From Auanema rhodensis (lineage: Eukaryota > Animalia > Nematoda), in assembly GCA_964057225.1 (NCBI GenBank), contig OZ059897.1, forward strand, positions 10,974,001 through 11,038,000: 64,000 nucleotides of DNA. The letters run 5' to 3'. The position numbers were made by a program, and so were the translations under genes. The notes under the pieces were generated by a model that saw nothing but the letters and a program-made list of their open reading frames with translations, had not been told where the DNA came from and did not search any database. Positions 1-64,000 of this stretch are shown in pieces. How positions within the stretch are numbered: the first letter of the stretch is position 1; the number at the start of each line of letters is the position of its first letter.

Positions 1-61
1 ATAGTGGTTAGTACTCCACGTTGTGGCCGTGGCGACACAGATTCGATTCCTGTCTTGGGCA
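1..61 (+). tRNA. trnH-GTG: tRNA-His(GTG), 5' end cut by the window edge, G53A variant
   Basis: Starts at tRNA position 12 (ATAGTGGTTAG) and ends CTTGGGCA before T6. Confidence 0.9.
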
Positions 62-207
62 TTTTTTGTTTTGAAATTAAAATGCTATAAACATATTGCT
101 TGCTTGTCATGTTAGATTTGTTTAATTCAAATACTTATTTAAGTTCTAACAATTTTCGATTTAATCACGTTCAATCAACTGTATTGTTTTCAAAAATAAA
201 GACATCT

Positions 208-260
208 TTCAATTTCTGGTCATTGAATTAGAATTTTCATGTTGTCACACAGAAATTGAA
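208..260. repeat. 11-bp perfect inverted repeat in the spacer (representative; present in most units)
   Basis: TTCAATTTCTG (208-218) and CAGAAATTGAA (250-260) are exact reverse complements. Confidence 0.85.
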
Positions 261-321
261 GAATCTTAGTTCATTTCAGTAACAATGAACACACTAACTT
301 TGTTAAGTTGTTGTAATATCG

Positions 322-393
322 GCCCAAGTAGTATAGTGGTCAGTACTCCACGTTGTGGCCGTGGCGACACAGATTCGATTCCTGTCTTGGGCA
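322..393 (+). tRNA. trnH-GTG: tRNA-His(GTG), G53A variant with C20a; possibly non-functional
   Basis: Anticodon GTG at 355-357. AGATTCGATTCC replaces AGGTTCGATTCC, giving an A53:C61 mismatch. Confidence 0.9.
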
Positions 394-399
394 TTTTTT
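394..399 (+). terminator. RNA polymerase III oligo-T terminator (representative; follows each copy)
   Basis: TTTTTT directly after A73, followed by GTTT(T/C). Confidence 0.9.
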
Positions 400-653
400 G
401 TTTCGAAATTAAAATGCTATAAACATATTGCTTGCTTGTCATGTTAGATTTCTTTAATTCAAATACATATTTAAGTTCTAACAATTTTTGATTTAATCAC
501 GTTCAATTAACTGTATTGTTTTCAAAAATAAAGACAAAATTCAATTTCTGGTCATTGAATTTGAATTTTCATGTTGTCACACAGAAATTGAAGAATCTTA
601 GTTCATTTCAGTAACAATGAACACACTAACTTTGTTAAGTTGTTGTAATATCG

Positions 654-725
654 GCCCAAGTAGTATAGTGGTTAGTACTCCACGTTGTGGCCGTGGCGAC
701 ACAGATTCGATTCCTGTCTTGGGCA
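654..725 (+). tRNA. trnH-GTG: tRNA-His(GTG), G53A variant
   Basis: Full cloverleaf with an A53:C61 mismatch. Confidence 0.9.
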
Positions 726-985
726 TTTTTTGTTTTGAAATTAAAATGCTATAAACATATTGCTTGCTTGTCATGTTAGATTTGTTTAATTCAAATACTT
801 ATTTAAGTTCTAACAATTTTCGATTTAATCACGTTCAATCAACTGTATTGTTTTCAAAAATAAAGACATCTTTCAATTTCTGGTCATTGAATTAGAATTT
901 TCATGTTGTCACACAGAAATTGAAGAATCTTAGTTCATTTCAGTAACAATGAACACACTAACTTTGTTAAGTTGTTGTAATATCG

Positions 986-1057
986 GCCCAAGTAGTATAG
1001 TGGTCAGTACTCCACGTTGTGGCCGTGGCGACACAGATTCGATTCCTGTCTTGGGCA
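986..1057 (+). tRNA. trnH-GTG: tRNA-His(GTG), G53A variant with C20a
   Basis: Full cloverleaf with an A53:C61 mismatch. Confidence 0.9.
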
Positions 1058-1324
1058 TTTTTTGTTTCGAAATTAAAATGCTATAAACATATTGCTTGCT
1101 TGTCATGTTAGATTTCTTTAATTCAAATACATATTTAAGTTCTAACAATTTTTGATTTAATCACGTTCAATTAACTGTATTGTTTTCAAAAATAAAGACA
1201 AAATTCAATTTCTGGTCATTGAATTTGAATTTTCATGTTGTCACACAGAAATTGAAGAATCTTAGTTCATTTCAGTAACAATGAACACACTAACTTTGTT
1301 TAGTTGTTGTAATATCGGCCCAAG

Positions 1325-1335
1325 TAGTATAGTGG
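1325..1335 (+). promoter_or_regulatory. Internal Pol III type-2 promoter A box (representative)
   Basis: TAGTATAGTGG at tRNA positions 8-19 fits the consensus TRGYnnARnGG. Confidence 0.85.
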
Positions 1336-1367
1336 TTAGTACTCCACGTTGTGGCCGTGGCGACACA

Positions 1368-1378
1368 GGTTCGATTCC
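1368..1378 (+). promoter_or_regulatory. Internal Pol III promoter B box, TFIIIC site (representative intact copy)
   Basis: GGTTCGATTCC matches the consensus GGTTCGAnTCC. Confidence 0.9.
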
Positions 1379-2313
1379 TGTCTTGGGCATTTTTTGTTTT
1401 GAAATTAAAATGCTACAAAATTATTGCTTGCTTGTCATGTTAGATTTCTTTAATTCAAATACATATTTAAGTTCTAACAATTTTCGATTTAATCACGTTC
1501 AATCAACTGTATTGTTTTCAAAAATAAAGACATCTTTCAATTTCTGGTCATTGAATTAGAATTTTCATGTTGTCACACAGAAATTGAAGAATCTTAGTTC
1601 ATTTCAGTAACAATGAACACACTAACTTTGTTAAGTTGTTGTAATATCGGCCCAAGTAGTATAGTGGTCAGTACTCCACGTTGTGGCCGTGGCGACACAG
1701 ATTCGATTCCTGTCTTGGGCATTTTTTGTTTCGAAATTAAAATGCTATAAACATATTGCTTGCTTGTCATGTTAGATTTCTTTAATTCAAATACATATTT
1801 AAGTTCTAACAATTTTTGATTTAATCACGTTCAATTAACTGTATTGTTTTCAAAAATAAAGACAAAATTCAATTTCTGGTCATTGAATTTGAATTTTCAT
1901 GTTGTCACACAGAAATTGAAGAATCTTAGTTCATTTCAGTAACAATGAACACACTAACTTTGTTTAGTTGTTGTAATATCGGCCCAAGTAGTATAGTGGT
2001 TAGTACTCCACGTTGTGGCCGTGGCGACACAGATTCGATTCCTGTCTTGGGCATTTTTTGTTTTGAAATTAAAATGCTACAAAATTATTGCTTGCTTGTC
2101 ATGTTAGATTTCTTTAATTTGAATACTTATTCAAGTTATAACAATTTTTGATTTAATCACGTTCAATCAACTGTATTGTTTTCAAAAATAAAGACATCTT
2201 TCAATTTCTGGTCATTGAATTAGAATTTTCATGTTGTCACACAGAAATTGAAGAATCTTAGTTCATTTCAGTAACAATGAACACACTAACTTTGTTAAGT
2301 TGTTGTAATATCG

Positions 2314-2385
2314 GCCCAAGTAGTATAGTGGTTAGTACTCCACGTTGTGGCCGTGGCGACACAGGTTCGATTCCTGTCTTGGGCA
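2314..2385 (+). tRNA. trnH-GTG: tRNA-His(GTG), canonical copy
   Basis: G10 and G53 intact; T6 terminator. Confidence 0.96.
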
Positions 2386-2645
2386 TTTTTTGTTTTGAAA
2401 TTTAAATGCTATAAAATTATTGCTTGCTTGTCATGTTAGATTTTTTTAATTTGAATACTTATTCAAGTTTCAACAATTTTGGATTTAATCACGTTCAATC
2501 AACTGTATTGTTTTCAAAAATAAAGACATCTTTCAATTTCTGGTCATTGAATTTGAATTTTCATGTTGTCACACAGAAATTGAAGATTCTTAGTTCAATT
2601 CAGTAACAATGAACACACTAATTTTTTTAAGTTGTTGTGATATCG

Positions 2646-2717
2646 GCCCAAGTAATATAGTGGTTAGTACTCCACGTTGTGGCCGTGGCGACACAGATTC
2701 GATTCCTGTCTTGGGCA
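2646..2717 (+). pseudogene. trnH-GTG: tRNA-His(GTG) G10A+G53A double variant, probable pseudogene
   Basis: AGTAATATAG (A10:C25 mismatch, A box altered) and AGATTCG (A53:C61 mismatch, B box altered). Confidence 0.7.
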
Positions 2718-3973
2718 TTTTTTGTTTTGAAATTAAAATGCTACAAAATTATTGCTTGCTTGTCATGTTAGATTTCTTTAATTTGAATACTTATTCCAGT
2801 TATAACAATTTTTGATTTAATCACGTTCAATCAACTGTATTGTTTTCAAAAATAAAGACATCTTTCAATTTCTGGTCATTGAATTAGAATTTTCATGTTG
2901 TCACACAGAAATTGAAGAATCTTAGTTCATTTCAGTAACAATGAACACACTAACTTTGTTAAGTTGTTGTAATATCGGCCCAAGTAGTATAGTGGTTAGT
3001 ACTCCACGTTGTGGCCGTGGCGACACAGATTCGATTCCTGTCTTGGGCATTTTTTGTTTTGAAATTAAAATGCTATAAACATATTGCTTGCTTGTCATGT
3101 TAGATTTGTTTAATTCAAATACTTATTTAAGTTCTAACAATTTTCGATTTAATCACGTTCAATCAACTGTATTGTTTTCAAAAATAAAGACATCTTTCAA
3201 TTTCTGGTCATTGAATTAGAATTTTCATGTTGTCACACAGAAATTGAAGAATCTTAGTTCATTTCAGTAACAATGAACACACTAACTTTGTTAAGTTGTT
3301 GTAATATCGGCCCAAGTAGTATAGTGGTCAGTACTCCACGTTGTGGCCGTGGCGACACAGATTCGATTCCTGTCTTGGGCATTTTTTGTTTCGAAATTAA
3401 TGTGCTACAAAATTATTGCTTGCTTGTCATGTTAGATTTGTTTAATTCAAATACTTATTTAAGTTCTAACAATTTTCGATTTAATCACGTTCAATCAACT
3501 GTATTGTTTTCAAAAATAAAGACATCTTTCAATTTCTGGTCATTGAATTAGAATTTTCATGTTGTCACACAGAAATTGAAGAATCTTAGTTCATTTCAGT
3601 AACAATGAACACACTAACTTTGTTAAATTGTTGTAATATCGGCCCAAGTAGTATAGTGGTCAGTACTCCACGTTGTGGCCGTGGCGACACAGATTCGATT
3701 CCTGTCTTGGGCATTTTTTGTTTCGAAATTAAAATGCTATAAACATATTGCTTGCTTGTCATGTTAGATTTCTTTAATTCAAATACATATTTAAGTTCTA
3801 ACAATTTTTGATTCAATCACGTTCAATTAACTGTATTGTTTTCAAAAATAAAGACAAAATTCAATTTCTGGTCATTGAATTTGAATTTTCATGTTGTCAC
3901 ACAGAAATTGAAGAATCTTAGTTCATTTCAGTAACAATGAACACACTAACTTTGTTAAGTTGTTGTAATATCG

Positions 3974-4045
3974 GCCCAAGTAGTATAGTGGTTAGTACTC
4001 CACGTTGTGGCCGTGGCGACACAGGTTCGATTCCTGTCTTGGGCA
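3974..4045 (+). tRNA. trnH-GTG: tRNA-His(GTG), canonical copy with first terminator run shortened to T4
   Basis: Intact gene followed by TTTTCTGTTTT. Confidence 0.95.
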
Positions 4046-4637
4046 TTTTCTGTTTTGAAATTTAAATGCTATAAAACTATTGCTTGCTTGTCATGTTAGA
4101 TTTTTTTAATTTGAATACTTATTCAAGTTTTAACAATTTTGGATTTAATCACGTTCAATCAACTGTATTGTTTTCAAAAATAAAGACATCTTTCAATTTC
4201 TGGTCATTGAATTTGAATTTTCATGTTGTCACACAGAAATTGAAGAATCTTAGTTCATTTCAGTAACAATGAACACACTAACTTTGTTAAGTTGTTGTAA
4301 TATCGGCCCAAGTAGTATAGTGGTTAGTACTCCACGTTGTGGCCGTGGCGACACAGATTCGATTCCTGTCTTGGGCATTTTTTGTTTCGAAATTAAAATG
4401 CTATAAACATATTGCTTGCTTGTCATGTTAGATTTCTTTAATTCAAATACATATTTAAGTTCTAACAATTTTTGATTTAATCACGTTCAATTAACTGTAT
4501 TGTTTTCAAAAATAAAGACAAAATTCAATTTCTGGTCATTGAATTTGAATTTTCATGTTGTCACACAGAAATTGAAGAATCTTAGTTCATTTCAGTAACA
4601 ATGAACACACTAACTTTGTTTAGTTGTTGTAATATCG

Positions 4638-4709
4638 GCCCAAGTAGTATAGTGGTTAGTACTCCACGTTGTGGCCGTGGCGACACAGGTTCGATTCCTG
4701 TCTTGGGCA
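4638..4709 (+). tRNA. trnH-GTG: tRNA-His(GTG), canonical copy
   Basis: Intact cloverleaf; higher-order equivalent of the copy at 1318. Confidence 0.96.
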
Positions 4710-7700
4710 TTTTTTGTTTTGAAATTAAAATGCTACAAAATTATTGCTTGCTTGTCATGTTAGATTTCTTTAATTCAAATACATATTTAAGTTCTAACAA
4801 TTTTCGATTTAATCACGTTCAATCAACTGTATTGTTTTCAAAAATAAAGACATCTTTCAATTTCTGGTCATTGAATTAGAATTTTCATGTTGTCACACAG
4901 AAATTGAAGAATCTTAGTTCATTTCAGTAACAATGAACACACTAACTTTGTTAAGTTGTTGTAATATCGGCCCAAGTAGTATAGTGGTCAGTACTCCACG
5001 TTGTGGCCGTGGCGACACAGATTCGATTCCTGTCTTGGGCATTTTTTGTTTCGAAATTAAAATGCTATAAACATATTGCTTGCTTGTCATGTTAGATTTC
5101 TTTAATTCAAATACATATTTAAGTTCTAACAATTTTTGATTTAATCACGTTCAATTAACTGTATTGTTTTCAAAAATAAAGACAAAATTCAATTTCTGGT
5201 CATTGAATTTGAATTTTCATGTTGTCACACAGAAATTGAAGAATCTTAGTTCATTTCAGTAACAATGAACACACTAACTTTGTTTAGTTGTTGTAATATC
5301 GGCCCAAGTAGTATAGTGGTTAGTACTCCACGTTGTGGCCGTGGCGACACAGATTCGATTCCTGTCTTGGGCATTTTTTGTTTTGAAATTAAAATGCTAC
5401 AAAATTATTGCTTGCTTGTCATGTTAGATTTCTTTAATTTGAATACTTATTCAAGTTATAACAATTTTTGATTTAATCACGTTCAATCAACTGTATTGTT
5501 TTCAAAAATAAAGACATCTTTCAATTTCTGGTCATTGAATTAGAATTTTCATGTTGTCACACAGAAATTGAAGAATCTTAGTTCATTTCAGTAACAATGA
5601 ACACACTAACTTTGTTAAGTTGTTGTAATATCGGCCCAAGTAGTATAGTGGTTAGTACTCCACGTTGTGGCCGTGGCGACACAGGTTCGATTCCTGTCTT
5701 GGGCATTTTTTGTTTTGAAATTTAAATGCTATAAAATTATTGCTTGCTTGTCATGTTAGATTTTTTTAATTTGAATACTTATTCAAGTTTCAACAATTTT
5801 GGATTTAATCACGTTCAATCAACTGTATTGTTTTCAAAAATAAAGACATCTTTCAATTTCTGGTCATTGAATTTGAATTTTCATGTTGTCACACAGAAAT
5901 TGAAGATTCTTAGTTCAATTCAGTAACAATGAACACACTAATTTTTTTAAGTTGTTGTGATATCGGCCCAAGTAATATAGTGGTTAGTACTCCACGTTGT
6001 GGCCGTGGCGACACAGATTCGATTCCTGTCTTGGGCATTTTTTGTTTTGAAATTAAAATGCTACAAAATTATTGCTTGCTTGTCATGTTAGATTTCTTTA
6101 ATTTGAATACTTATTCCAGTTATAACAATTTTTGATTTAATCACGTTCAATCAACTGTATTGTTTTCAAAAATAAAGACATCTTTCAATTTCTGGTCATT
6201 GAATTAGAATTTTCATGTTGTCACACAGAAATTGAAGAATCTTAGTTCATTTCAGTAACAATGAACACACTAACTTTGTTAAGTTGTTGTAATATCGGCC
6301 CAAGTAGTATAGTGGTTAGTACTCCACGTTGTGGCCGTGGCGACACAGATTCGATTCCTGTCTTGGGCATTTTTTGTTTTGAAATTAAAATGCTATAAAC
6401 ATATTGCTTGCTTGTCATGTTAGATTTGTTTAATTCAAATACTTATTTAAGTTCTAACAATTTTCGATTTAATCACGTTCAATCAACTGTATTGTTTTCA
6501 AAAATAAAGACATCTTTCAATTTCTGGTCATTGAATTAGAATTTTCATGTTGTCACACAGAAATTGAAGAATCTTAGTTCATTTCAGTAACAATGAACAC
6601 ACTAACTTTGTTAAGTTGTTGTAATATCGGCCCAAGTAGTATAGTGGTCAGTACTCCACGTTGTGGCCGTGGCGACACAGATTCGATTCCTGTCTTGGGC
6701 ATTTTTTGTTTCGAAATTAATGTGCTACAAAATTATTGCTTGCTTGTCATGTTAGATTTGTTTAATTCAAATACTTATTTAAGTTCTAACAATTTTCGAT
6801 TTAATCACGTTCAATCAACTGTATTGTTTTCAAAAATAAAGACATCTTTCAATTTCTGGTCATTGAATTAGAATTTTCATGTTGTCACACAGAAATTGAA
6901 GAATCTTAGTTCATTTCAGTAACAATGAACACACTAACTTTGTTAAATTGTTGTAATATCGGCCCAAGTAGTGTAGTGGTCAGTACTCCACGTTGTGGCC
7001 GTGGCGACACAGATTCGATTCCTGTCTTGGGCATTTTTTGTTTTGAAATTAAAATGCTATAAACATATTGCTTGCTTGTCATGTTAGATTTGTTTAATTC
7101 AAATACTTATTTAAGTTCTAACAATTTTCGATTTAATCACGTTCAATCAACTGTATTGTTTTCAAAAATAAAGACATCTTTCAATTTCTGGTCATTGAAT
7201 TAGAATTTTCATGTTGTCACACAGAAATTGAAGAATCTTAGTTCATTTCAGTAACAATGAACACACTAACTTTGTTAAGTTGTTGTAATATCGGCCCAAG
7301 TAGTATAGTGGTCAGTACTCCACGTTGTGGCCGTGGCGACACAGATTCGATTCCTGTCTTGGGCATTTTTTGTTTCGAAATTAATGTGCTACAATATTAT
7401 TGCTTGCTTGTCATGTTAGATTTGTTTAATTCAAATACTTATTTAAGTTCTAACAATTTTCGATTTAATCACGTTCAATCAACTGTATTGTTTTCAAAAA
7501 TAAAGACATCTTTCAATTTCTGGTCATTGAATTAGAATTTTCATGTTGTCACACAGAAATTGAAGAATCTTAGTTCATTTCAGTAACAATGAACACACTA
7601 ACTTTGTTAAATTGTTGTAATATCGGCCCAAGTAGTATAGTGGTCAGTACTCCACGTTGTGGCCGTGGCGACACAGATTCGATTCCTGTCTTGGGCATTT

Positions 7701-10700
7701 TTTGTTTCGAAATTAAAATGCTATAAACATATTGCTTGCTTGTCATGTTAGATTTCTTTAATTCAAATACATATTTAAGTTCTAACAATTTTTGATTCAA
7801 TCACGTTCAATTAACTGTATTGTTTTCAAAAATAAAGACAAAATTCAATTTCTGGTCATTGAATTTGAATTTTCATGTTGTCACACAGAAATTGAAGAAT
7901 CTTAGTTCATTTCAGTAACAATGAACACACTAACTTTGTTAAGTTGTTGTAATATCGGCCCAAGTAGTATAGTGGTTAGTACTCCACGTTGTGGCCGTGG
8001 CGACACAGGTTCGATTCCTGTCTTGGGCATTTTCTGTTTTGAAATTTAAATGCTATAAAACTATTGCCTGCTTGTCATGTTAGATTTTTTTAATTTGAAT
8101 ACTTATTCAAGTTTTAACAATTTTGGATTTAATCACGTTCAATCAACTGTATTGTTTTCAAAAATAAAGACATCTTTCAATTTCTGGTCATTGAATTTGA
8201 ATTTTCATGTTGTCACACAGAAATTGAAGAATCTTAGTTCATTTCAGTAACAATGAACACACTAACTTTGTTAAGTTGTTGTAATATCGGCCCAAGTAGT
8301 ATAGTGGTTAGTACTCCACGTTGTGGCCGTGGCGACACAGATTCGATTCCTGTCTTGGGCATTTTTTGTTTCGAAATTAAAATGCTATAAACATATTGCT
8401 TGCTTGTCATGTTAGATTTCTTTAATTCAAATACATATTTAAGTTCTAACAATTTTTGATTTAATCACGTTCAATTAACTGTATTGTTTTCAAAAATAAA
8501 GACAAAATTCAATTTCTGGTCATTGAATTTGAATTTTCATGTTGTCACACAGAAATTGAAGAATCTTAGTTCATTTCAGTAACAATGAACACACTAACTT
8601 TGTTTAGTTGTTGTAATATCGGCCCAAGTAGTATAGTGGTTAGTACTCCACGTTGTGGCCGTGGCGACACAGGTTCGATTCCTGTCTTGGGCATTTTTTG
8701 TTTTGAAATTAAAATGCTACAAAATTATTGCTTGCTTGTCATGTTAGATTTCTTTAATTCAAATACATATTTAAGTTCTAACAATTTTCGATTTAATCAC
8801 GTTCAATCAACTGTATTGTTTTCAAAAATAAAGACATCTTTCAATTTCTGGTCATTGAATTAGAATTTTCATGTTGTCACACAGAAATTGAAGAATCTTA
8901 GTTCATTTCAGTAACAATGAACACACTAACTTTGTTAAGTTGTTGTAATATCGGCCCAAGTAGTATAGTGGTCAGTACTCCACGTTGTGGCCGTGGCGAC
9001 ACAGATTCGATTCCTGTCTTGGGCATTTTTTGTTTCGAAATTAAAATGCTATAAACATATTGCTTGCTTGTCATGTTAGATTTCTTTAATTCAAATACAT
9101 ATTTAAGTTCTAACAATTTTTGATTTAATCACGTTCAATTAACTGTATTGTTTTCAAAAATAAAGACAAAATTCAATTTCTGGTCATTGAATTTGAATTT
9201 TCATGTTGTCACACAGAAATTGAAGAATCTTAGTTCATTTCAGTAACAATGAACACACTAACTTTGTTTAGTTGTTGTAATATCGGCCCAAGTAGTATAG
9301 TGGTTAGTACTCCACGTTGTGGCCGTGGCGACACAGATTCGATTCCTGTCTTGGGCATTTTTTGTTTTGAAATTAAAATGCTACAAAATTATTGCTTGCT
9401 TGTCATGTTAGATTTCTTTAATTTGAATACTTATTCAAGTTATAACAATTTTTGATTTAATCACGTTCAATCAACTGTATTGTTTTCAAAAATAAAGACA
9501 TCTTTCAATTTCTGGTCATTGAATTAGAATTTTCATGTTGTCACACAGAAATTGAAGAATCTTAGTTCATTTCAGTAACAATGAACACACTAACTTTGTT
9601 AAGTTGTTGTAATATCGGCCCAAGTAGTATAGTGGTTAGTACTCCACGTTGTGGCCGTGGCGACACAGGTTCGATTCCTGTCTTGGGCATTTTTTGTTTT
9701 GAAATTTAAATGCTATAAAATTATTGCTTGCTTGTCATGTTAGATTTTTTTAATTTGAATACTTATTCAAGTTTCAACAATTTTGGATTTAATCACGTTC
9801 AATCAACTGTATTGTTTTCAAAAATAAAGACATCTTTCAATTTCTGGTCATTGAATTTGAATTTTCATGTTGTCACACAGAAATTGAAGATTCTTAGTTC
9901 AATTCAGTAACAATGAACACACTAATTTTTTTAAGTTGTTGTGATATCGGCCCAAGTAATATAGTGGTTAGTACTCCACGTTGTGGCCGTGGCGACACAG
10001 ATTCGATTCCTGTCTTGGGCATTTTTTGTTTTGAAATTAAAATGCTACAAAATTATTGCTTGCTTGTCATGTTAGATTTCTTTAATTTGAATACTTATTC
10101 CAGTTATAACAATTTTTGATTTAATCACGTTCAATCAACTGTATTGTTTTCAAAAATAAAGACATCTTTCAATTTCTGGTCATTGAATTAGAATTTTCAT
10201 GTTGTCACACAGAAATTGAAGAATCTTAGTTCATTTCAGTAACAATGAACACACTAACTTTGTTAAGTTGTTGTAATATCGGCCCAAGTAGTATAGTGGT
10301 TAGTACTCCACGTTGTGGCCGTGGCGACACAGATTCGATTCCTGTCTTGGGCATTTTTTGTTTTGAAATTAAAATGCTATAAACATATTGCTTGCTTGTC
10401 ATGTTAGATTTGTTTAATTCAAATACTTATTTAAGTTCTAACAATTTTCGATTTAATCACGTTCAATCAACTGTATTGTTTTCAAAAATAAAGACATCTT
10501 TCAATTTCTGGTCATTGAATTAGAATTTTCATGTTGTCACACAGAAATTGAAGAATCTTAGTTCATTTCAGTAACAATGAACACACTAACTTTGTTAAGT
10601 TGTTGTAATATCGGCCCAAGTAGTATAGTGGTCAGTACTCCACGTTGTGGCCGTGGCGACACAGATTCGATTCCTGTCTTGGGCATTTTTTGTTTCGAAA

Positions 10701-13700
10701 TTAATGTGCTACAAAATTATTGCTTGCTTGTCATGTTAGATTTGTTTAATTCAAATACTTATTTAAGTTCTAACAATTTTCGATTTAATCACGTTCAATC
10801 AACTGTATTGTTTTCAAAAATAAAGACATCTTTCAATTTCTGGTCATTGAATTAGAATTTTCATGTTGTCACACAGAAATTGAAGAATCTTAGTTCATTT
10901 CAGTAACAATGAACACACTAACTTTGTTAAATTGTTGTAATATCGGCCCAAGTAGTATAGTGGTCAGTACTCCACGTTGTGGCCGTGGCGACACAGATTC
11001 GATTCCTGTCTTGGGCATTTTTTGTTTCGAAATTAAAATGCTATAAACATATTGCTTGCTTGTCATGTTAGATTTCTTTAATTCAAATACATATTTAAGT
11101 TCTAACAATTTTTGATTTAATCACGTTCAATTAACTGTATTGTTTTCAAAAATAAAGACAAAATTCAATTTCTGGTCATTGAATTTGAATTTTCATGTTG
11201 TCACACAGAAATTGAAGAATCTTAGTTCATTTCAGTAACAATGAACACACTAACTTTGTTTAGTTGTTGTAATATCGGCCCAAGTAGTATAGTGGTTAGT
11301 ACTCCACGTTGTGGCCGTGGCGACACAGATTCGATTCCTGTCTTGGGCATTTTTTGTTTTGAAATTAAAATGCTACAAAATTATTGCTTGCTTGTCATGT
11401 TAGATTTCTTTAATTTGAATACTTATTCAAGTTATAACAATTTTTGATTTAATCACGTTCAATCAACTGTATTGTTTTCAAAAATAAAGACATCTTTCAA
11501 TTTCTGGTCATTGAATTAGAATTTTCATGTTGTCACACAGAAATTGAAGAATCTTAGTTCATTTCAGTAACAATGAACACACTAACTTTGTTAAGTTGTT
11601 GTAATATCGGCCCAAGTAGTATAGTGGTTAGTACTCCACGTTGTGGCCGTGGCGACACAGGTTCGATTCCTGTCTTGGGCATTTTTTGTTTTGAAATTTA
11701 AATGCTATAAAATTATTGCTTGCTTGTCATGTTAGATTTTTTTAATTTGAATACTTATTCAAGTTTCAACAATTTTGGATTTAATCACGTTCAATCAACT
11801 GTATTGTTTTCAAAAATAAAGACATCTTTCAATTTCTGGTCATTGAATTTGAATTTTCATGTTGTCACACAGAAATTGAAGATTCTTAGTTCAATTCAGT
11901 AACAATGAACACACTAATTTTTTTAAGTTGTTGTGATATCGGCCCAAGTAATATAGTGGTTAGTACTCCACGTTGTGGCCGTGGCGACACAGATTCGATT
12001 CCTGTCTTGGGCATTTTTTGTTTTGAAATTAAAATGCTACAAAATTATTGCTTGCTTGTCATGTTAGATTTCTTTAATTTGAATACTTATTCCAGTTATA
12101 ACAATTTTTGATTTAATCACGTTCAATCAACTGTATTGTTTTCAAAAATAAAGACATCTTTCAATTTCTGGTCATTGAATTAGAATTTTCATGTTGTCAC
12201 ACAGAAATTGAAGAATCTTAGTTCATTTCAGTAACAATGAACACACTAACTTTGTTAAGTTGTTGTAATATCGGCCCAAGTAGTATAGTGGTTAGTACTC
12301 CACGTTGTGGCCGTGGCGACACAGATTCGATTCCTGTCTTGGGCATTTTTTGTTTTGAAATTAAAATGCTATAAACATATTGCTTGCTTGTCATGTTAGA
12401 TTTGTTTAATTCAAATACTTATTTAAGTTCTAACAATTTTCGATTTAATCACGTTCAATCAACTGTATTGTTTTCAAAAATAAAGACATCTTTCAATTTC
12501 TGGTCATTGAATTAGAATTTTCATGTTGTCACACAGAAATTGAAGAATCTTAGTTCATTTCAGTAACAATGAACACACTAACTTTGTTAAGTTGTTGTAA
12601 TATCGGCCCAAGTAGTATAGTGGTCAGTACTCCACGTTGTGGCCGTGGCGACACAGATTCGATTCCTGTCTTGGGCATTTTTTGTTTCGAAATTAATGTG
12701 CTACAAAATTATTGCTTGCTTGTCATGTTAGATTTGTTTAATTCAAATACTTATTTAAGTTCTAACAATTTTCGATTTAATCACGTTCAATCAACTGTAT
12801 TGTTTTCAAAAATAAAGACATCTTTCAATTTCTGGTCATTGAATTAGAATTTTCATGTTGTCACACAGAAATTGAAGAATCTTAGTTCATTTCAGTAACA
12901 ATGAACACACTAACTTTGTTAAATTGTTGTAATATCGGCCCAAGTAGTATAGTGGTCAGTACTCCACGTTGTGGCCGTGGCGACACAGATTCGATTCCTG
13001 TCTTGGGCATTTTTTGTTTCGAAATTAAAATGCTATAAACATATTGCTTGCTTGTCATGTTAGATTTCTTTAATTCAAATACATATTTAAGTTCTAACAA
13101 TTTTTGATTCAATCACGTTCAATTAACTGTATTGTTTTCAAAAATAAAGACAAAATTCAATTTCTGGTCATTGAATTTGAATTTTCATGTTGTCACACAG
13201 AAATTGAAGAATCTTAGTTCATTTCAGTAACAATGAACACACTAACTTTGTTAAGTTGTTGTAATATCGGCCCAAGTAGTATAGTGGTTAGTACTCCACG
13301 TTGTGGCCGTGGCGACACAGGTTCGATTCCTGTCTTGGGCATTTTCTGTTTTGAAATTTAAATGCTATAAAACTATTGCTTGCTTGTCATGTTAGATTTT
13401 TTTAATTTGAATACTTATTCAAGTTTTAACAATTTTGGATTTAATCACGTTCAATCAACTGTATTGTTTTCAAAAATAAAGACATCTTTCAATTTCTGGT
13501 CATTGAATTTGAATTTTCATGTTGTCACACAGAAATTGAAGAATCTTAGTTCATTTCAGTAACAATGAACACACTAACTTTGTTAAGTTGTTGTAATATC
13601 GGCCCAAGTAGTATAGTGGTTAGTACTCCACGTTGTGGCCGTGGCGACACAGATTCGATTCCTGTCTTGGGCATTTTTTGTTTTGAAATTAAAATGCTAT

Positions 13701-14929: not shown

Positions 14930-15001
14930 GCCCAAGTAGTATAGTGGTTAGTACTCCACGTTGTGGCCGTGGCGACACAGGTTCGATTCCTGTCTTGGGC
15001 A
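14930..15001 (+). tRNA. trnH-GTG: tRNA-His(GTG), canonical copy
   Basis: G10 and G53 intact. Confidence 0.96.
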
Positions 15002-15261
15002 TTTTTTGTTTTGAAATTAAAATGCTACAAAATTATTGCTTGCTTGTCATGTTAGATTTCTTTAATTCAAATACATATTTAAGTTCTAACAATTTTTGAT
15101 TTAATCACGTTCAATTAACTGTATTGTTTTCAAAAATAAAGACAAAATTCAATTTCTGTTCATTGAATTAGAATTTTCATGTTGTCACACAGAAATTGAA
15201 GAATCTTAGTTCATTTCAGTAACAATGAACAGAATAACTTTGTTTAGTTGTTGTCATATCG

Positions 15262-15333
15262 GCCCAAGTAGTATAGTGGTTAGTACTCCACGTTGTGGCC
15301 GTGGCGACACAGGTTCGATTCCTGTCTTGGGCA
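15262..15333 (+). tRNA. trnH-GTG: tRNA-His(GTG), canonical copy with AACAGAATAAC upstream haplotype
   Basis: G10 and G53 intact. Confidence 0.96.
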
Positions 15334-27877: not shown

Positions 27878-27949
27878 GCCCAAGTAATATAGTGGTTAGT
27901 ACTCCACTTTGTGGCCGTGGCGACACAGATTCGATTCCTTTGTTGGGCA
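27878..27949 (+). pseudogene. trnH-GTG: Degenerate tRNA-His(GTG) (G10A, G31T, G53A, G64T, C66G)
   Basis: CCACTTTGTGG and CCTTTGTTGGGC; there are mismatches in all four stems. Confidence 0.88.
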
Positions 27950-41489: not shown

Positions 41490-41561
41490 GCCCAAGTAGT
41501 ATAGTGGTTAGTACTCCACGTTGTGGCCGTGGCGACACAGGTTCGATTCCTGTCTTGGGCA
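41490..41561 (+). tRNA. trnH-GTG: tRNA-His(GTG), canonical copy followed by a T7 terminator (4-bp deletion)
   Basis: Intact gene followed by TTTTTTTGAAA instead of TTTTTTGTTTTGAAA. Confidence 0.95.
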
Positions 41562-44500
41562 TTTTTTTGAAATTAAAATGCTATAAAATTATTGCTTGCT
41601 TGTCTTGTTAGATTTCTTTAATTTGAATACTTATTCAAGTTATAACAATTTTCGATTTAATCACGTTCAATCAACTGTATTGTTTTCAAAAATAAAGACA
41701 AAATTCAATTTCTGGTCATTGAATTAGAATTTTCATGTTGTCACACAGGAAATGAAGAATCTCAGTTCATTTCAGTAACAATGAACACACTAACTTTGTT
41801 AAGTTGTTGTAATATCGGCCCAAGTAGTATAGTGGTTAGTACTCCACGTTGTGGCCGTGGCGACACAGATTCGATTCCTGTCTTGGGCATTTTTTGTTTT
41901 GAAATTAAAATACTACAAAATTATTGCTTGCTTGTCATGTTAGATTTCTTTAATTCAAATACATATTTAAGTACTAACAATTTTTGATTTAATCACGTTC
42001 AATTAACTGTATTGTTTTCAAAAATAAAGACAAAATTCAATTTCTGTTCATTGAATTAGAATTTTCATGTTGTCACACAGAAATTGAAGAATCTTAGTTC
42101 ATTTCAGTAACAATGAACAGAATAACTTTGTTTAGTTGTTGTAATATCGGGCCAAGTAGTATAGTGGTTAGTACTCCACGTTGTGGCCGTGGCGACACAG
42201 GTTCGATTCCTGTCTTGGGCATTTTTTGTTTTGGAATTAAAATGCTACAAAATTATTGCTTGCTTGTCATGTTAGATTTCTTTAATTCAAATACATATTT
42301 AAGTTCTAACAATTTTTGATTTAATCACGTTCAATTAACTGTATTGTTTTCAAAAATAAAGACAAAATTCAATTTCTGTTCATTGAATTAGAATTTTCAT
42401 GTTGTCACACAGAAATTGAAGAATCTTAGTTCATTTCAGTAACAATGAACAGAATAACTTTGTTTAGTTGTTGTCATATCGGCCCAAGTAGTATAGTGGT
42501 TAGTACTCCACGTTGTGGCCGAGGCGACACAGGTTCGATTCCTGTCTTGGGCATTTTTTGTTTTGAAATTAAAATGCTATAAACATATTGCTTGCTTGTC
42601 ATGTTAGATTTTTTTAATTCAAATACTTATTTAAGTTCTAACAATTTTTGATTTAATCACGTTCAATTAACTGTATTGTTTTCAAAAATAAAGACATTTT
42701 TCAATTTCTGGTCATTGAATTAGAATTTTCATGTTGTCACACAGAAATTGAAGATTCTTAGTTCAATTCAGTAACAATGAACACACTAACTTTTTTAAGT
42801 TGTTGTGATATCGGCCCAAGTAATATAGTGGTTAGTACTCCACGTTGTGGCCGTGGCGACACAGATTCGATTCCTGTCTTGGGCATTTTTTGTTTTGAAA
42901 TTAAAATGCTACAAAATTATTGCTTGCTTGTCATGTTAGATTTCTTTAATTTGAATACTTATTCAAGTTATAACAATTTTTGATTTAATCACGTTCAATC
43001 AACTGTATTGTTTTCAAAAATAAAGACAAAATTCAATTTCTGTTCATTGAATTAGAATTTTCATGTTGTCACACAGAAATTGAAGAATCTTAGTTCAATT
43101 CAGTAACAATGAACACACTAACTTTGTTAAGTTGTTGTAATATCGGCCCAAGTAATATAGTGGTTAGTACTCCACGTTGTGGCCGTGGCGACACAGATTC
43201 GATTCCTGTCTTGGGCATTTTTTGTTTTGAAATTAATGTGCTACAAAATTATTGCTTGCTTGTCATGTTAGATTTCTATAATTTGAATACTTTTTCAAGT
43301 TATAACAATTTTTGATTTAATCACGTTCAATTAACTGTATTGTTTTCAGAAATAAAGACATCTTTCAATTTCTGGTCATTGAATTAGAATTTTCATGTTG
43401 TCACACAGAAATTGAAGAATCTTAGTTCATTTCAGTAACAATGAACACACTAACTTTGTTAAGTTGTTGTAATATCGGCCCAAGTAGTATAGTGGTTAGT
43501 ACTCCACGTTGTGGCCGTGGCGACACAGGTTCGATTCCTGTCTTGGGCATTTTTTGTTTTGAAATTAAAATGCTATAAAATTATTGCTTGCTTGTCTTGT
43601 TAGATTTCTTTAATTTGAATACTTATTCAAGTTATAACAATTTTTGATTTAATCACGTTCAATCAACTGTATTGTTTTCAAAAATAAAGACAAAATTCAA
43701 TTTCTGTTCATTGAATTAGAATTTTCATGTTGTCACACAGAAATTGAAGAATCTTAGTTCAATTCAGTAACAATGAACACACTAACTTTGTTAAGTTGTT
43801 GTAATATCGGCCCAAGTAATATAGTGGTTAGTACTCCACGTTGTGGCCGTGGCGACACAGATTCGATTCCTGTTTTGGGCATTTTTTGTTTTGAAATTTA
43901 AATGCTATAAAATTATTGCTTGCTTGTCATGTTAGATTTCTTTAATTTGAATATTTATTCAAGTTATAACAATTTTCGATTTAATCACGTTCAATCAACT
44001 GTATTGTTTTCAAAAATAAAGACAAAATTCAATTTCTGTTCATTGAATTAGAATTTTCATGTTGTCACACAGAAATTGAAGAATCTTAGTTCATTTCAGT
44101 AACAATGAACAGAATAACTTTTTTTAGTTGTTGTAATATCGGCCCAAGTAGTATAGTGGTTAGTACTCCACGTTGTGGCCGTGGCGACACAGGTTCGATT
44201 CCTGTCTTGGGCATTTTTTGTTTTGAAATTAAAATGCTATAAACATATTGCTAGCTTGTCATGTTAGATTTCTCTAATTTGAATGCTTATTCAAGTTCTA
44301 ACAATTTTTGATTTAATCACGTTTAATTAATAGTATTGTTTTCAAAAATAAAGACATCTTTCAATTTCTGGCCTTTGAATTAGAATTTTCATGTTGTCAC
44401 ACAGAAATTGAAGAATCTTAGTTCAATTCAGTAACAATGAACACACTAACTTTGTTAAGTTGTTGTAATATCGGCCCAAGTAATATAGTGGTTAGTACTC

Positions 44501-46797: not shown

Positions 46798-46869
46798 GCC
46801 TAAGTAGTATAGTGGTTAGTACTCCACGTTGTGGCCGTGGCGACACAGGTTCGATTCCTGTCTTGGGCA
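46798..46869 (+). tRNA. trnH-GTG: tRNA-His(GTG) C4T isodecoder (U4:G69 wobble)
   Basis: GCCTAAG/CTTGGGC with intact A and B boxes. Confidence 0.88.
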
Positions 46870-54433: not shown

Positions 54434-54505
54434 GCCCAAGTAGTATAGTGGTTAGTACTCCACGTTGTGGCCGTGGCGACACAGGTTCGATTCCTGTCTT
54501 GGGCA
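54434..54505 (+). tRNA. trnH-GTG: tRNA-His(GTG), canonical copy
   Basis: G10 and G53 intact. Confidence 0.95.
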
Positions 54506-57500: not shown

Positions 57501-60500
57501 TTTTGAAATTAAAATGCTATAAAATTATTGCTTGCTTGTCTTGTTAGATTTCTTTAATTTGAATACTTATTCAAGTTATAACAATTTTCGATTTAATCAC
57601 GTTCAATCAACTGTATTGTTTTCAAAAATAAAGACAAAATTCAATTTCTGTTCATTGAATTAGAATTTTCATGTTGTCACACAGAAATTGAAGAATCTTA
57701 GTTCAATTCAGTAACAATGAACACACTAACTTTGTTAAGTTGTTGTAATATCGGCCCAAGTAATATAGTGGTTAGTACTCCACGTTGTGGCCGTGGCGAC
57801 ACAGATTCGATTCCTGTCTTGGGCATTTTTTGTTTTGAAATTAAAATGCTACAAAATTATTGCTTGCTTGTCATGTTAGATTTCTTTAATTCAAATACAT
57901 ATTTAAGTTCTAACAATTTTTGATTTAATCACGTTCAATTAACTGTATTGTTTTCAAAAATAAAGACAAAATTCAATTTCTGTTCATTGAATTAGAATTT
58001 TCATGTTGTCACACAGAAATTGAAGAATCTTAGTTCATTTCAGTAACAATGAACAGAATAACTTTGTTTAGTTGTTGTAATATCGGCCCAAGTAGTATAG
58101 TGGTTAGTACTCCACGTTGTGGCCGTGGCGACACAGGTTTGATTCCTGTCTTGGGCATTTTTTGTTTTGAAATTAAAATGCTACAAAATTATTGCTTGCT
58201 TGTCATGTTAGATTTCTTTAATTCAAATACATATTTAAGTTCTAACAATTTTTGATTTAATCACGTTCAATTAACTGTATTGTTTTCAAAAATAAAGACA
58301 AAATTCAATTTCTGTTCATTGAATTAGAATTTTCATGTTGTCACACAGAAATTGAAGAATCTTAGTTCATTTCAGTAACAATGAACAGAATAACTTTGTT
58401 TAGTTGTTGTCATATCGGCCTAAGTAGTATAGTGGTTAGTACTCCACGTTGTGGCCGTGGCGACACAGGTTCGATTCCTGTCTTGGGCATTTTTTGTTTT
58501 GAAATTAAAATGCTATAAACATATTGCTTGCTTGTCATGTTAGATTTCTTTAATTCAAATACTTATTTAAGTTCTAACAATTTTTGATTTAATCACGTTC
58601 AATTAACTGTATTGTTTTCAAAAATAAAGACATCTTTCAATTTCTGGTCATTGAATTAGAATTTTCATGTTGTCACACAGAAATTGAAGATTCTTAGTTC
58701 AATTCAGTAACAATGAACACACTAACTTTTTTAAGTTGTTGTGATATCGGCCCAAGTAATATAGTGGTTAGTACTCCACGTTGTGGCCGTGGCGACACAG
58801 ATTCGATTCCTGTCTTGGGCATTTTTTGTTTTGAAATTAAAATGCTACAAAATTATTGCTTGCTTGTCATGTTAGATTTCTTTAATTTGAATACTTATTC
58901 AAGTTATAACAATTTTTGATTTAATCACGTTCAATCAACTGTATTGTTTTCAAAAATAAAGACATCTTTCAATTTCTGGTCATTGAATTAGAATTTTCAT
59001 GTTGTCACACAGAAATTGAAGAATCTTAGTTCATTTCAGTAACAATGAACACACTAACTTTGTTAAGTTGTTGTAATATCGGCCCTAGTAGTATAGTGGT
59101 TAGTACTCCACGTTGTGGCCGTGGCGACACAGGTTCGATTCCTGTCTTGGGCATTTTTTGTTTTGAAATTTAAATGCTATAAAATTATTGCTTGCTTGTC
59201 ATGTTAGATTTTTTTAATTTGAATACTTATTCAAGTTTTAACAATTTTGGATTTAATCACGTTCAATCAACTGTATTGTTTTCAAAAATAAAGACATCTT
59301 TCAATTTCTGGTCATTGAATTTGAATTTTCATGTTGTCACACAGAAATTGAAGAATCTTAGTTCATTTCAGTAACAATGAACACACTTACTTTGTTAAGT
59401 TGTTGTAATATCGGCCCAAGTAGTATAGTGGTTAGTACTCCACGTTGTGGCCGTGGCGACACAGATTCGATTCCTGTCTTGGGCATTTTTTGTTTTGAAA
59501 TTAAAATGCTATAAACATATTGCTTGCTTGTCATGTTAGATTTGTTTAATTCAAATACTTATTTAAGTTCTAACAATTTTCGATTTAATCACGTTCAATC
59601 AACTGTATTGTTTTCAAAAATAAAGACATCTTTCAATTTCTGGTCATTGAATTAGAATTTTCATGTTGTCACACAGAAATTGAAGAATCTTAGTTCATTT
59701 CAGTAACAATGAACACACTAACTTTGTTAAGTTGTTGTAATATCGGCCCAAGTAGTATAGTGGTCAGTACTCCACGTTGTGGCCGTGGCGACACAGATTC
59801 GATTCCTGTCTTGGGCATTTTTTGTTTCGAAATTAAAATGCTATAAACATATTGCTTGCTTGTCATGTTAGATTTGTTTAATTCAAATACTTATTTAAGT
59901 TCCAACAATTTTTGATTTAATCACGTTCAATTAACTGTATTGTTTTCAAAAATAAAGACATCTTTCAATTTCTGGTCATTGAATTAGAATTTTCATGTTG
60001 TCACACAGAAATTGAAGATTCTTAGTTCAATTCAGTAACAATGAACACACTAACTTTTTTAAGTTGTTGTGATATCGGCCCAAGTAGTATAGTGGTTAGT
60101 ACTCCACGTTGTGGCCGTGGCGACACAGATTCGATTCCTGTCTTGGGCATTTTTTGTTTTGAAATTTAAATGCTATAAAATTATTGCTTGCTTGTCATGT
60201 TAGATTTGTTTAATTCAAATACTTATTTAAGTTCCAACAATTTTCAATCAAATCACGTTCATTTAACTGTATTGTTTTCAAAAATAAAGACAAAATTCAA
60301 TTTCTGTTCGTTGAATTAGAATTTTCATGTTGTCACACAGAAATTGAAGAATCTTAGTTCATTTCAGTAACAATGAACACACTAACTTTGTTAAGTTGTT
60401 GTAATATCGGCCCAAGTAGTATAGTGGTTAGTACTCCACGTTGTGGCCGTGGCGACACAGGTTCGATTCCTGTCTTGGGCATTTTTTGTTTTGAAATTAA

Positions 60501-63396
60501 AATGCTATAAAATTATTGCTTGCTTGTCTTGTTAGATTTCTTTAATTTGAATACTTATTCAAGTTATAACAATTTTCGATTTAATCACGTTCAATCAACT
60601 GTATTGTTTTCAAAAATAAAGACAAAATTCAATTTCTGTTCGTTGAATTAGAATTTTCATGTTGTCACACAGAAATTGAAGAATCTTAGTTCATTTCAGT
60701 AACAATGAACACACTAACTTTGTTAAGTTGTTGTAATATCGGCCCAAGTAATATAGTGGTTAGTACTCCACGTTGTGGCCGTGGCGACACAGATTCGATT
60801 CCTGTCTTGGGCATTTTTTGTTTTGAAATTAAAATGCTACAAAATTATTGCTTGCTTGTCATGTTAGATTTCTTTAATTCAAATACATATTTAAGTTCTA
60901 ACAATTTTTGATTTAATCACGTTCAATTAACTGTATTGTTTTCAAAAATAAAGACAAAATTCAATTTCTGTTCATTGAATTAGAATTTTCATGTTGTCAC
61001 ACAGAAATTGAAGAATCTTAGTTCATTTCAGTAACAATGAACACACTAACTTTTTTAAGTTGTTGTGATATCGGCCCAAGTAATATAGTGGTTAGTACTC
61101 CACGTTGTGGCCGTGGCGACACAGATTCGATTCCTGTCTTGGGCATTTTTGTTTTGAAATTAAAATGCTACAAAATTATTGCTTGCTTGTCATGTTAGAT
61201 TTCTTTAATTTGAATACTTATTCAAGTTATAACAATTTTTGATTTAATCACGTTCAATCAACTGTATTGTTTTCAAAAATAAAGACAAAATTCAATTTCT
61301 GTTCATTGAATTAGAATTTTCATGTTGTCACACAGAAATTGAAGAATCTTAGTTCAATTCAGTAACAATGAACACACTAACTTTGTTAAGTTGTTGTGAT
61401 ATCGGCCCAAGTAATATAGTGGTTAGTACTCCACGTTGTGGCCGTGGCGACACAGATTCGATTCCTGTCTTGGGCATTTTTTGTTTTGAAATTAATGTGC
61501 TACAAAATTATTGCTTGCTTGTCATGTTAGATTTCTATAATTTGAATACTTTTTCAAGTTATAACAATTTTTGATTTAATCACGTTCAATTAACTGTATT
61601 GTTTTCAGAAATAAAGACATCTTTCAATTTCTGGTCATTGAATTAGAATTTTCATGTTGTCACACAGAAATTGAAGATTCTTAGTTCAATTCAGTAACAA
61701 TGAACACACTAACTTTGTTAAGTTGTTGTGATATCGGCCCAAGTAATATAGTGGTTAGTACTCCACGTTGTGGCCGTGGCGACACAGATTCGATTCCTGT
61801 CTTGGGCATTTTTTGTTTTGAAATTAAAATGCTACAAAATTATTGCTTGCTTGTCATGTTAGATTTCTTTAATTTGAATACTTATTCAAGTTATAACAAT
61901 TTTTGATTTAATCACGTTCAATCAACTGTATTGTTTTCAAAAATAAAGACAAAATTCAATTTCTGTTCATTGAATTAGAATTTTCATGTTGTCACACAGA
62001 AATTGAAGAATCTTAGTTCAATTCAGTAACAATGAACACACTAACTTTGTTAAGTTGTTGTAATATCGGCTCAAGTAATATAGTGGTTAGTACTCCACGT
62101 TGTGGCCGTGGCGACACAGATTCGATTCCTGTTTTGGGCATTTTTTGTTTTGAAATTTAAATGCTATAAAATTATTGCTTGCTTGTCATGTTAGATTTCT
62201 TTAATTTGAATATTTATTCAAGTTATAACAATTTTCGATTTAATCACGTTCAATCAACTGTATTGTTTTCAAAAATAAAGACAAAATTCAATTTCTGTTC
62301 ATTGAATTAGAATTTTCATGTTGTCACACAGAAATTGAAGAATCTTAGTTCATTTCAGTAACAATGAACAGAATAACTTTGTTTAGTTGTTGTAATATCG
62401 GCCCAAGTAGTATAGTGGTTAGTACTCCACGTTGTGGCCGTGGCGACACAGGTTCGATTCCTGTCTTGGGCATTTTTTGTTTTGAAATTAAAATGCTATA
62501 AACATATTGCTAGCTTGTCATGTTAGATTTCTTTAATTTGAATACTTATTCAAGTTCTAACAATTTTTAATTTAATCACGTTTAATTAATAGTATTGTTT
62601 TCAAAAATAAAGACATCTTTCAATTTCTGGCCTTTGAATTAGAATTTTCATGTTGTCACACAGAAATTGAAGAATCTTAGTTCAATTCAGTAACAATGAA
62701 CACACTAACTTTGTTAAGTTGTTGTAATATCGGCCCAAGTAATATAGTGGTTAGTACTCCACGTTGTGGCCGTGGCGACACAGATTCGATTCCTTTGTTG
62801 GGCATTTTTCGTTTTGAAATTAAAATGCTACAAAATTATTGCTTGCTTGTCATGTTAGATTTCTTTAATTTGAATACTTATTCAAGTAATAACAATTTTC
62901 GATTTAATCACGTTCAATTAATAGTATTGTTTTCAAAAATAAAGACATCTTTCAATTTCTGGCCTTTGAATTAGAATTTTCATGTTGTGACACAGAAATT
63001 GAAGAATCTTAGTTCATTTCAGTAACAATGAACACACTAACTTTGTTAAGTTGTTGTTATATTGGCCCAAGTAATATAGTGGTTAGTACTCCACGTTGTG
63101 GCCGTGGCGACACAGATTCGATTCCTGTCTTGGGCATTTTTTGTTTTGAAATTAAAATGCTACAAAATTATTGCTTGCTTGTCATGTTAGATTTCTTTAA
63201 TTTGAATACTTATTCAAGTTATAACAATTTTTGATTTAATCACGTTCAATCAACTGTATTGTTTTCAAAAATAAAGACATCTTTCAATTTCTGGTCATTG
63301 AATTAGAATTTTCATGTTGTCACACAGAAATTGAAGAATCTTAGTTCATTTCAGTAACAATGAACACACTAACTTTGTTAAGTTGTTGTAATATCG

Positions 63397-63468
63397 GCCC
63401 AAGTAGTATAGTGGTTAGTACTCCACGTTGTGGCCGTGGCGACACAGGTTCGATTCCTGTCTTGGGCA
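63397..63468 (+). tRNA. trnH-GTG: tRNA-His(GTG), last canonical copy in the window
   Basis: G10 and G53 intact; T6 terminator. Confidence 0.95.
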
Positions 63469-63728
63469 TTTTTTGTTTTGAAATTTAAATGCTATAAAAT
63501 TATTGCTTGCTTGTCATGTTAGATTTTTTTAATTTGAATACTTATTCAAGTTTTAACAATTTTGGATTTAATCACGTTCAATCAACTGTATTGTTTTCAA
63601 AAATAAAGACATCTTTCAATTTCTGGTCATTGAATTTGAATTTTCATGTTGTCACACAGAAATTGAAGAATCTTAGTTCATTTCAGTAACAATGAACACA
63701 CTTACTTTGTTAAGTTGTTGTAATATCG

Positions 63729-63800
63729 GCCCAAGTAGTATAGTGGTTAGTACTCCACGTTGTGGCCGTGGCGACACAGATTCGATTCCTGTCTTGGGCA
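63729..63800 (+). tRNA. trnH-GTG: tRNA-His(GTG), G53A variant, last complete copy
   Basis: Cloverleaf with AGATTCG. Confidence 0.9.
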
Positions 63801-64000
63801 TTTTTTGTTTTGAAATTAAAATGCTATAAACATATTGCTTGCTTGTCATGTTAGATTTGTTTAATTCAAATACTTATTTAAGTTCTAACAATTTTCGATT
63901 TAATCACGTTCAATCAACTGTATTGTTTTCAAAAATAAAGACATCTTTCAATTTCTGGTCATTGAATTAGAATTTTCATGTTGTCACACAGAAATTGAAG

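What the first reader, a model, noticed from the sequence alone, without database searches (positions are those of the whole stretch)
1..64000. A tRNA-His gene array of at least 64 kb organised like satellite DNA
Seen: at least 192 copies of one tRNA-His(GTG) gene at a fixed 332-bp period, all on one strand, with no insertions and with higher-order repeats. Only about 56 copies are canonical (manual count). Known: most eukaryotes carry far fewer tRNA-His genes, and His is a low-frequency amino acid. Tandem tRNA arrays exist (e.g. Entamoeba arrays with STR spacers), and tDNA/TFIIIC sites act as chromatin barriers and condensin sites in yeasts. Inference: copy number is not set by tRNA demand alone, and the array may be a tDNA-derived structural satellite (centromeric, pericentromeric or subtelomeric).
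Basis: partly seen in the sequence, partly recalled or inferred. Interest (0 to 1): 0.85.

Follow-up and report, generated by a model that had tools for sequence, protein, structure and literature searches.

The report
Decaying nematode tRNA-His tandem array
A roundworm chromosome (very probably Auanema rhodense) carries a real head-to-tail string of at least 192 histidine-tRNA genes, about two-thirds of them hit in their internal promoter; it is one of many such arrays in a genome whose roughly 19,500 tRNA genes were reported in outline in 2026, so it is striking but not a new kind of element.

Summary
Observation confirmed. The whole window is one 332-bp tandem repeat (192.8 copies), each unit a + strand tRNA-His(GUG) gene with encoded G-1 and a T6 terminator. 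There are no insertions and two small deletions. 55 of 192 genes are canonical; 123 carry A/B-box hits (G53A 106, G10A 65, C56T 7). Units differ by 4.6% on average, with irregular block duplications and heavy intra-unit recombination. The longest exact repeat is 2.9 kb, and the unit with head-to-tail joints stands in independent short-read runs, so it is not an assembly expansion. The host is very probably Auanema rhodense (scan notes plus a 2026 preprint; not proven by my own tools), which has 19,554 tRNA genes and tandem tRNA blocks in DNA eliminated from the soma. The scan has already noted this same array in neighbouring windows (about 0.5 Mb) and arrays of many other isotypes. Best reading: a tRNA gene amplified as satellite under relaxed selection, probably in germline-restricted DNA. 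A centromeric role is unlikely in a holocentric nematode. A maternal tRNA supply, as in zebrafish, remains open. Small new points: most copies are promoter-damaged yet would probably escape the pseudogene call, and intact copies tend not to be neighbours.

The parts
1..64000 (+). Tandem array of a 332-bp unit (72-bp tRNA-His gene + 260-bp AT-rich spacer), 192.8 copies, running off both ends
1318..1389 (+). Example of a canonical tRNA-His(GUG) gene (55 of 192 are identical to it); full cloverleaf, A73 discriminator, no intron
   Evidence: Rfam 67.3 bits; fold -26.3 kcal/mol; counts
1317..1317 (+). Genome-encoded G at -1, invariant in all 192 units (His identity element as in C. elegans)
   Evidence: PMC4338351
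1325..1335 (+). A box of the internal Pol III promoter; G10A in 65 of 192 genes
   Evidence: box assignment from established knowledge
1369..1377 (+). B box (standard 53-61); G53A in 106 of 192 genes, C56T in 7
   Evidence: TFIIIC contacts this G in yeast tRNA-His (PMC11724288)
1390..1400 (+). Pol III terminator (T6, G, T4) directly after the gene; nearly invariant
1390..1649 (+). Spacer (75% AT), diversity 0.052 against 0.024 in the gene; no short tandem repeats, no internal period
654..725 (+). Example G53A copy (breaks the 53-61 pair and the B box), still 61 bits in Rfam
2646..2717 (+). Example G10A + G53A double-hit copy (55 genes carry both)
27878..27949 (+). Most degenerate copy (five changes), missed by ARAGORN
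2978..10945 (+). Largest recent block duplication: 12 units (2978-6961) repeated at 6962-10945 with 4 differences; holds the longest exact repeat (2888 bp at 4085 and 8069)
41490..41817 (+). 328-bp unit: 4-bp deletion in the terminator region
61074..61404 (+). 331-bp unit: 1-bp deletion in the terminator T-run

Best explanation
A nuclear tRNA-His gene with its flanks has been amplified head-to-tail in a nematode (very probably Auanema rhodense) and now turns over like satellite DNA: unequal exchange or slippage copies blocks of 4-12 units, and exchange within units shuffles variants. Copy number far exceeds need, so copies that lose their Pol III promoter (G53A, G10A, C56T) cost little and spread to about 64%. 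About a third stay transcribable and probably add some tRNA, with weak selection against copies that would make a faulty tRNA. The block probably lies in repeat DNA that is cut out of body cells by programmed DNA elimination, where repeats pile up because selection is weak. Shown: anatomy, variant counts, block duplication, recombination, presence in independent reads. Inferred: species, loss of transcription in mutant copies, germline restriction, relaxed selection.
For: Block duplications at many lags, 118 of 191 units with an identical twin, adjacent units never identical. Four-gamete incompatibility in 77-100% of common site pairs more than 40 bp apart. 123 of 192 genes hit at invariant box positions; the G53 position is a TFIIIC contact (PMC11724288). 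Gene has half the shared polymorphism of the spacer (10/72 vs 69/260, p=0.03; 20 expected), with the anticodon intact in all 191 complete units. Preprint: 19,554 tRNA genes, tandem tRNA, 5S and U2 blocks among germline-restricted repeats, retained autosomal regions typically under 10% repeat, and repeat build-up read as a by-product of elimination. The somatic-only assembly had about 500 tRNA loci (PMC6469403). Scan notes: the same His array in windows to -434 kb, many other isotypes arrayed, a break site on this piece.
Against: The species is not shown by my own tools (run labels are coded). Germline restriction of this array is not shown: scan notes place other tRNA arrays in introns of ordinary genes, gene density here is 21.7% whereas the preprint says ncRNA loci are always under 20% per 10 kb, and short-read collapse could also explain the old count of 500. 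Intact copies avoid being neighbours more than expected (p about 0.01-0.04), which pure drift does not predict. The constraint signal is modest, post hoc and non-independent because of block duplication. No expression data.
Confidence: 0.6

Rival explanations
1. Maternal supply: the array is a germline-only tRNA factory, kept large to stock eggs, like zebrafish maternal-type tRNA clusters; body cells delete it and use dispersed His genes.
For: 55 canonical and 69 promoter-intact copies in 64 kb alone; G-1, anticodon and terminator kept. Eliminated DNA holds tRNA, 5S and U2 arrays together. In zebrafish, egg tRNAs come from repetitive clusters and later ones from dispersed genes (PMC11417395; 10.1101/869651). 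Other His loci with unrelated flanks exist in the same runs (table 7).
Against: Two-thirds of copies are promoter-damaged and these variants are the commonest in the gene. No RNA evidence (RNA runs with the same species label hold next to none of the words, but such libraries would usually miss tRNA). Germline location unproven.
Confidence: 0.22
2. Structural role: TFIIIC/condensin-binding or chromosome-specific repeat block acting as chromatin barrier, meiotic pairing landmark or centromeric satellite.
For: Fixed period with almost no indels. The preprint speculates that autosome-centre repeat blocks may aid homolog pairing. Intact B boxes are spread rather evenly, never more than 7 units apart.
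Against: 55% of units have lost the B-box G that TFIIIC contacts, the opposite of selection for TFIIIC sites. No conserved spacer motif beyond one low-diversity stretch. Rhabditid nematodes are holocentric (own knowledge). No telomeric repeat and no match to the four published satellite probes.
Confidence: 0.13
3. Assembly expansion of a shorter array.
For: Long near-identical repeats are a usual source of assembly error; the true length cannot be read from contigs.
Against: 107 distinct units of 191. Longest exact repeat 2.9 kb, well under the ~15-kb HiFi inserts of the preprint. The unit, its polymorphisms and head-to-tail joints stand in runs of 2019, 2023 and 2024 from three studies at very high summed depth.
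Confidence: 0.03

Closest known systems
Tandem tRNA blocks of Auanema rhodense (bioRxiv 10.64898/2026.08.27.747507)
   Same: Very probably the same genome; tandem tRNA loci among repeats with 167-504-bp units; 19,554 tRNA genes.
   Different: The preprint text that I could read gives no unit-level description (its tables S3 and S4 are images that I could not read) and counts only 215 pseudogenes genome-wide, whereas 123 of 192 genes here carry A/B-box hits. Whether this array is in the eliminated part is not shown.
Zebrafish chromosome 4 clusters of maternal-type tRNA genes (PMC11417395; 10.1101/869651)
   Same: Thousands of tRNA genes in large same-isotype clusters in repeat-rich chromatin, with dispersed copies elsewhere.
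   Different: There, expression in eggs is shown and the clusters stay in all cells; here no expression data exist and the block is probably deleted from the soma.
Entamoeba tRNA arrays (PMC2652664)
   Same: Head-to-tail tRNA gene units making up a large part of the genome.
   Different: Entamoeba units hold up to five genes with STR spacers (in E. histolytica and E. dispar) and are nearly uniform within an isolate; here one gene per unit, no STRs, 4.6% divergence and mostly damaged promoters.
Arabidopsis chromosome 1 tRNA array of 27 triplet units (PMC2886086) and human 1q23.3 tRNA VNTR (PMC4041453); abstracts only
   Same: Local tandem amplification of tRNA genes.
   Different: Far fewer units (27 triplets; 9-43 units of 7.3 kb), and several genes per unit in Arabidopsis.

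Membership tests
Eukaryotic nuclear tRNA-His gene (Pol III type 2) | Cloverleaf with GUG anticodon, A73, A and B boxes, T-run terminator | tested here: met
   (55 copies fully canonical)
Nematode (C. elegans)-type tRNA-His | Genome-encoded G-1 opposite A73 | tested here: met
   G at -1 in 192 of 192; PMC4338351. Not unique to nematodes.
Tandem multigene array / satellite under concerted evolution | Head-to-tail units, block duplication, recombination among units | tested here: met
Regular higher-order-repeat satellite (alpha-satellite type) | One fixed n-mer repeated throughout | tested here: not met
   Lag spectrum nearly flat (13-16 differences at all lags); duplications are local with changing lags
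A. rhodense germline-restricted repeat blocks | Sequence comes from A. rhodense | tested here: inconclusive
   Nematode-type gene; run years fit the 2019 A. rhodensis DNA and RNA data but labels are coded; scan notes place published break sites in this genome, one on this piece (unchecked by me)
A. rhodense germline-restricted repeat blocks | Lies between break sites and is under-represented in somatic DNA | not testable with these tools
   Only contigs could be laid; their depth is not a copy number and no single-copy reference is in the window
A. rhodense named satellites AT-1, XT-1, XT-2, XR-1 | Match to the published FISH probe sequences | tested here: not met
   0 matches at up to 3 mismatches
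Entamoeba-type tRNA array | Spacers made of short tandem repeats; units uniform within an isolate | tested here: not met
   No internal period in the unit above shuffles; 107 distinct units
Maternal-type tRNA cluster (zebrafish) | Transcripts from the cluster dominate in eggs | not testable with these tools
   No small-RNA raw reads offered
Centromeric satellite | CENP-A/CENH3 enrichment at a localised centromere | not testable with these tools
   No ChIP data; unlikely in a holocentric lineage (own knowledge)

The most novel reading that the evidence does not exclude
The array is part of a germline-only Pol III gene depot: it supplies maternal tRNA-His and is switched off in body cells by physical deletion rather than silencing, and its output is buffered by promoter-dead spacer copies so that active genes tend to alternate with dead ones.
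Probability: 0.15. Interest if true: 0.75.

Novelty: new member of a known kind. Interest (0 to 1): 0.36.

Why it matters
It is an unusually clean record of a working gene turning into satellite DNA: one unit, one period, allele frequencies readable copy by copy. It warns that the published count of about 19,500 tRNA genes with only 215 pseudogenes probably overstates functional genes, since single promoter hits keep high scores. If the array proves germline-restricted and expressed in eggs, it would make directly testable whether programmed DNA elimination removes useful germline RNA genes or only junk.

Tried and rejected
ORFs: 101 short mechanical frames that follow the repeat; no gene. Rfam beyond tRNA: only sub-threshold chance hits. 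Spacer 32-mer in metagenome contigs: none. Published satellite probes and telomere dimers: none. Internal period or dimer of 166 bp within the unit: no better than shuffles, so the 2 x 166 nucleosome idea has no sequence support. One regular HOR: rejected. G53A frequency in independent runs: not listed, but that table also omits other common variants (e.g. place 1226), so it is uninformative. Gene-to-spacer depth ratio differs among runs (about 4 in X5, 1.3 in X1), which could reflect germline share, GC bias or other His loci; not used. Paper searches found no unit-level description of nematode tRNA arrays.

Full report
Observation. The window is a single tandem repeat from base 1 to 64000 with period 332 and 192.8 copies; GC is flat at 30-32%. 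ARAGORN finds 191 tRNA-His(GTG) genes, all on the + strand. An anchor search finds 192 whole genes and a 5'-cut one at 1-61; the copy missed by ARAGORN, at 27878, has five changes. Of 191 complete units 189 are 332 bp; the other two have lost 4 bp and 1 bp in the terminator T-run.

Anatomy. Each unit is a 72-bp intronless gene followed at once by a T6 terminator and a 260-bp AT-rich spacer without internal period. The canonical gene scores 67.3 bits against Rfam tRNA and folds as a cloverleaf. All 192 genes have G at -1 opposite A73, the genome-encoded identity element described for C. elegans, which lacks Thg1 (PMC4338351). Of 192 genes, 55 are canonical, 123 are hit at an invariant A- or B-box position, 7 have only a stem mismatch and 7 a benign change; G53A is in 106, G10A in 65 (55 have both), C56T in 7. 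G53A breaks the 53-61 pair and removes a base that TFIIIC contacts in the yeast tRNA-His gene structure (PMC11724288). That such copies are poorly transcribed is inference, not measured here.

Mode of evolution. Units differ by 15 bases on average (4.6%), almost regardless of distance. 118 of 191 units have an identical twin, adjacent units are never identical, and near-identical runs of 4-12 units recur at lags of 6, 7, 9, 10, 11, 12, 22 and more: repeated block duplication, not one regular higher-order repeat. Linkage between common variants decays within about 40 bp and most pairs show all four combinations, so units are also reshuffled internally. The gene has about half the shared polymorphism of the spacer (10 of 72 against 69 of 260 sites, p=0.03; 20 expected from spacer rates), the anticodon arm is almost untouched and the anticodon intact in every complete unit, while sites that vary in any copy at all are about as frequent as in the spacer (20 of 72 against 87 of 260, p=0.40). 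The pattern fits weak selection against faulty transcripts together with tolerance of silent copies. It is modest, and copies are not independent.

One oddity: the 69 promoter-intact copies are direct neighbours less often than expected (lag-1 correlation -0.29; 1.3% of 386 matched spacer-allele indicators are as low; p 0.02-0.04 on de-duplicated junctions). This was found post hoc and may only reflect the make-up of the ancestral blocks. I record it as unexplained.

Not an artefact. There are 107 distinct units and the longest exact repeat is 2888 bp, far below the ~15-kb HiFi inserts used for the likely source assembly. Eleven public runs from three studies (2019, 2023, 2024) hold half or more of the unit's words. 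Laid on one unit, four of them cover gene and spacer throughout, show the same spacer polymorphisms, and three have contigs joining the unit's end to its start. Depths are very high but are not copy numbers. In run X4 the spacer is at trace level, so that run looks like another organism with a little of this DNA; X6 shares a His-gene flank with X1, so it is not evidence for a second species.

Context. Scan notes (AI, unchecked by me unless stated) call the genome a nematode, most likely Auanema rhodense. They report His arrays (332-bp where the period is given) in windows reaching about 434 kb upstream and another 742 kb upstream, arrays of Phe, Ala, Leu, Trp, Arg and Asp genes, and elimination break sites, one 6.1 Mb along this piece. 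I read the preprint they point to (10.64898/2026.08.27.747507). It reports a 180.9-Mb germline genome of which about 61% is eliminated from somatic cells, 19,554 tRNA genes with only 215 called pseudogenes, tandem blocks of tRNA, 5S and U2 genes among germline-restricted repeats, and retained autosomal regions typically under 10% repeat. One scan note (mre-11 twin at a boundary) matches a detail in the preprint. The earlier somatic assembly had about 500 tRNA loci (PMC6469403). I put the species at about 0.9 and germline restriction of this array at about 0.7; neither is shown by my own tools, some arrays are said to sit in introns of ordinary genes, and the 21.7% gene density here slightly exceeds the preprint's 'always under 20%'. 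The window matches none of the four published satellite probes.

Mechanism. Most likely a His gene with flanks was amplified by unequal exchange or slippage in a region where repeats are cheap, and copy number is now set by turnover, not demand. Promoter-dead variants have drifted to a majority; a third of the copies remain competent. The preprint itself argues that repeats pile up as a by-product of elimination. The main rival is a maternal supply like the zebrafish clusters, whose tRNAs dominate eggs while dispersed genes serve later stages (PMC11417395; 10.1101/869651); His genes with unrelated flanks do exist in these runs. A structural role is possible but loss of the TFIIIC contact base in 55% of units argues against selection for TFIIIC sites, and a localised centromere is not expected in a holocentric nematode (own knowledge).

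Comparison and novelty. Tandem tRNA arrays are known from Entamoeba (PMC2652664), zebrafish, Arabidopsis and human, and in outline from this genome. It works like those arrays in structure; it is not an Entamoeba-type array (no STR spacers, not uniform) nor a regular HOR satellite. New here is only the unit-level picture. One useful consequence: tRNAscan-SE calls a pseudogene only below 55 bits and with a low sequence or structure score (PMC8450103); G53A copies score 61 bits with the Rfam model (a different model, so indicative), so the published 215 pseudogenes probably undercount damaged genes by far.

Verdict. Real, correctly described, a new member of a known kind, already seen by this scan in neighbouring windows. 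Interest 0.36. The germline-depot reading has probability about 0.15 and would deserve about 0.75.

Noticed in passing
run X4 laid on window:1190-1521: In organism B the tRNA part has summed depth near 100,000 while the spacer has 40-130, with several unrelated flanks; B may carry its own amplified, near-identical tRNA-His genes. Summed contig depth is not a copy number.
   Followed up: no
loose ends at window 1313 and 1390 (table 7): Runs X1, X5 and X6 hold His genes with the same body but unrelated flanks: candidate dispersed or differently arrayed copies that could serve the soma.
   Followed up: no
unit positions 233-282, e.g. window 1550-1599: A 50-bp spacer stretch 50-100 bp upstream of the next gene is as uniform as the gene itself (diversity 0.019); chance or an upstream element.
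   Followed up: partly
whole window: Promoter-intact copies avoid being direct neighbours; unexplained, post hoc.
   Followed up: partly
window 1-64000: Variant frequencies shift along the array: G10A is rare in the first 21 kb (8 of 64 genes) and common after; canonical copies peak at 32-42 kb.
   Followed up: partly
   Followed up: no
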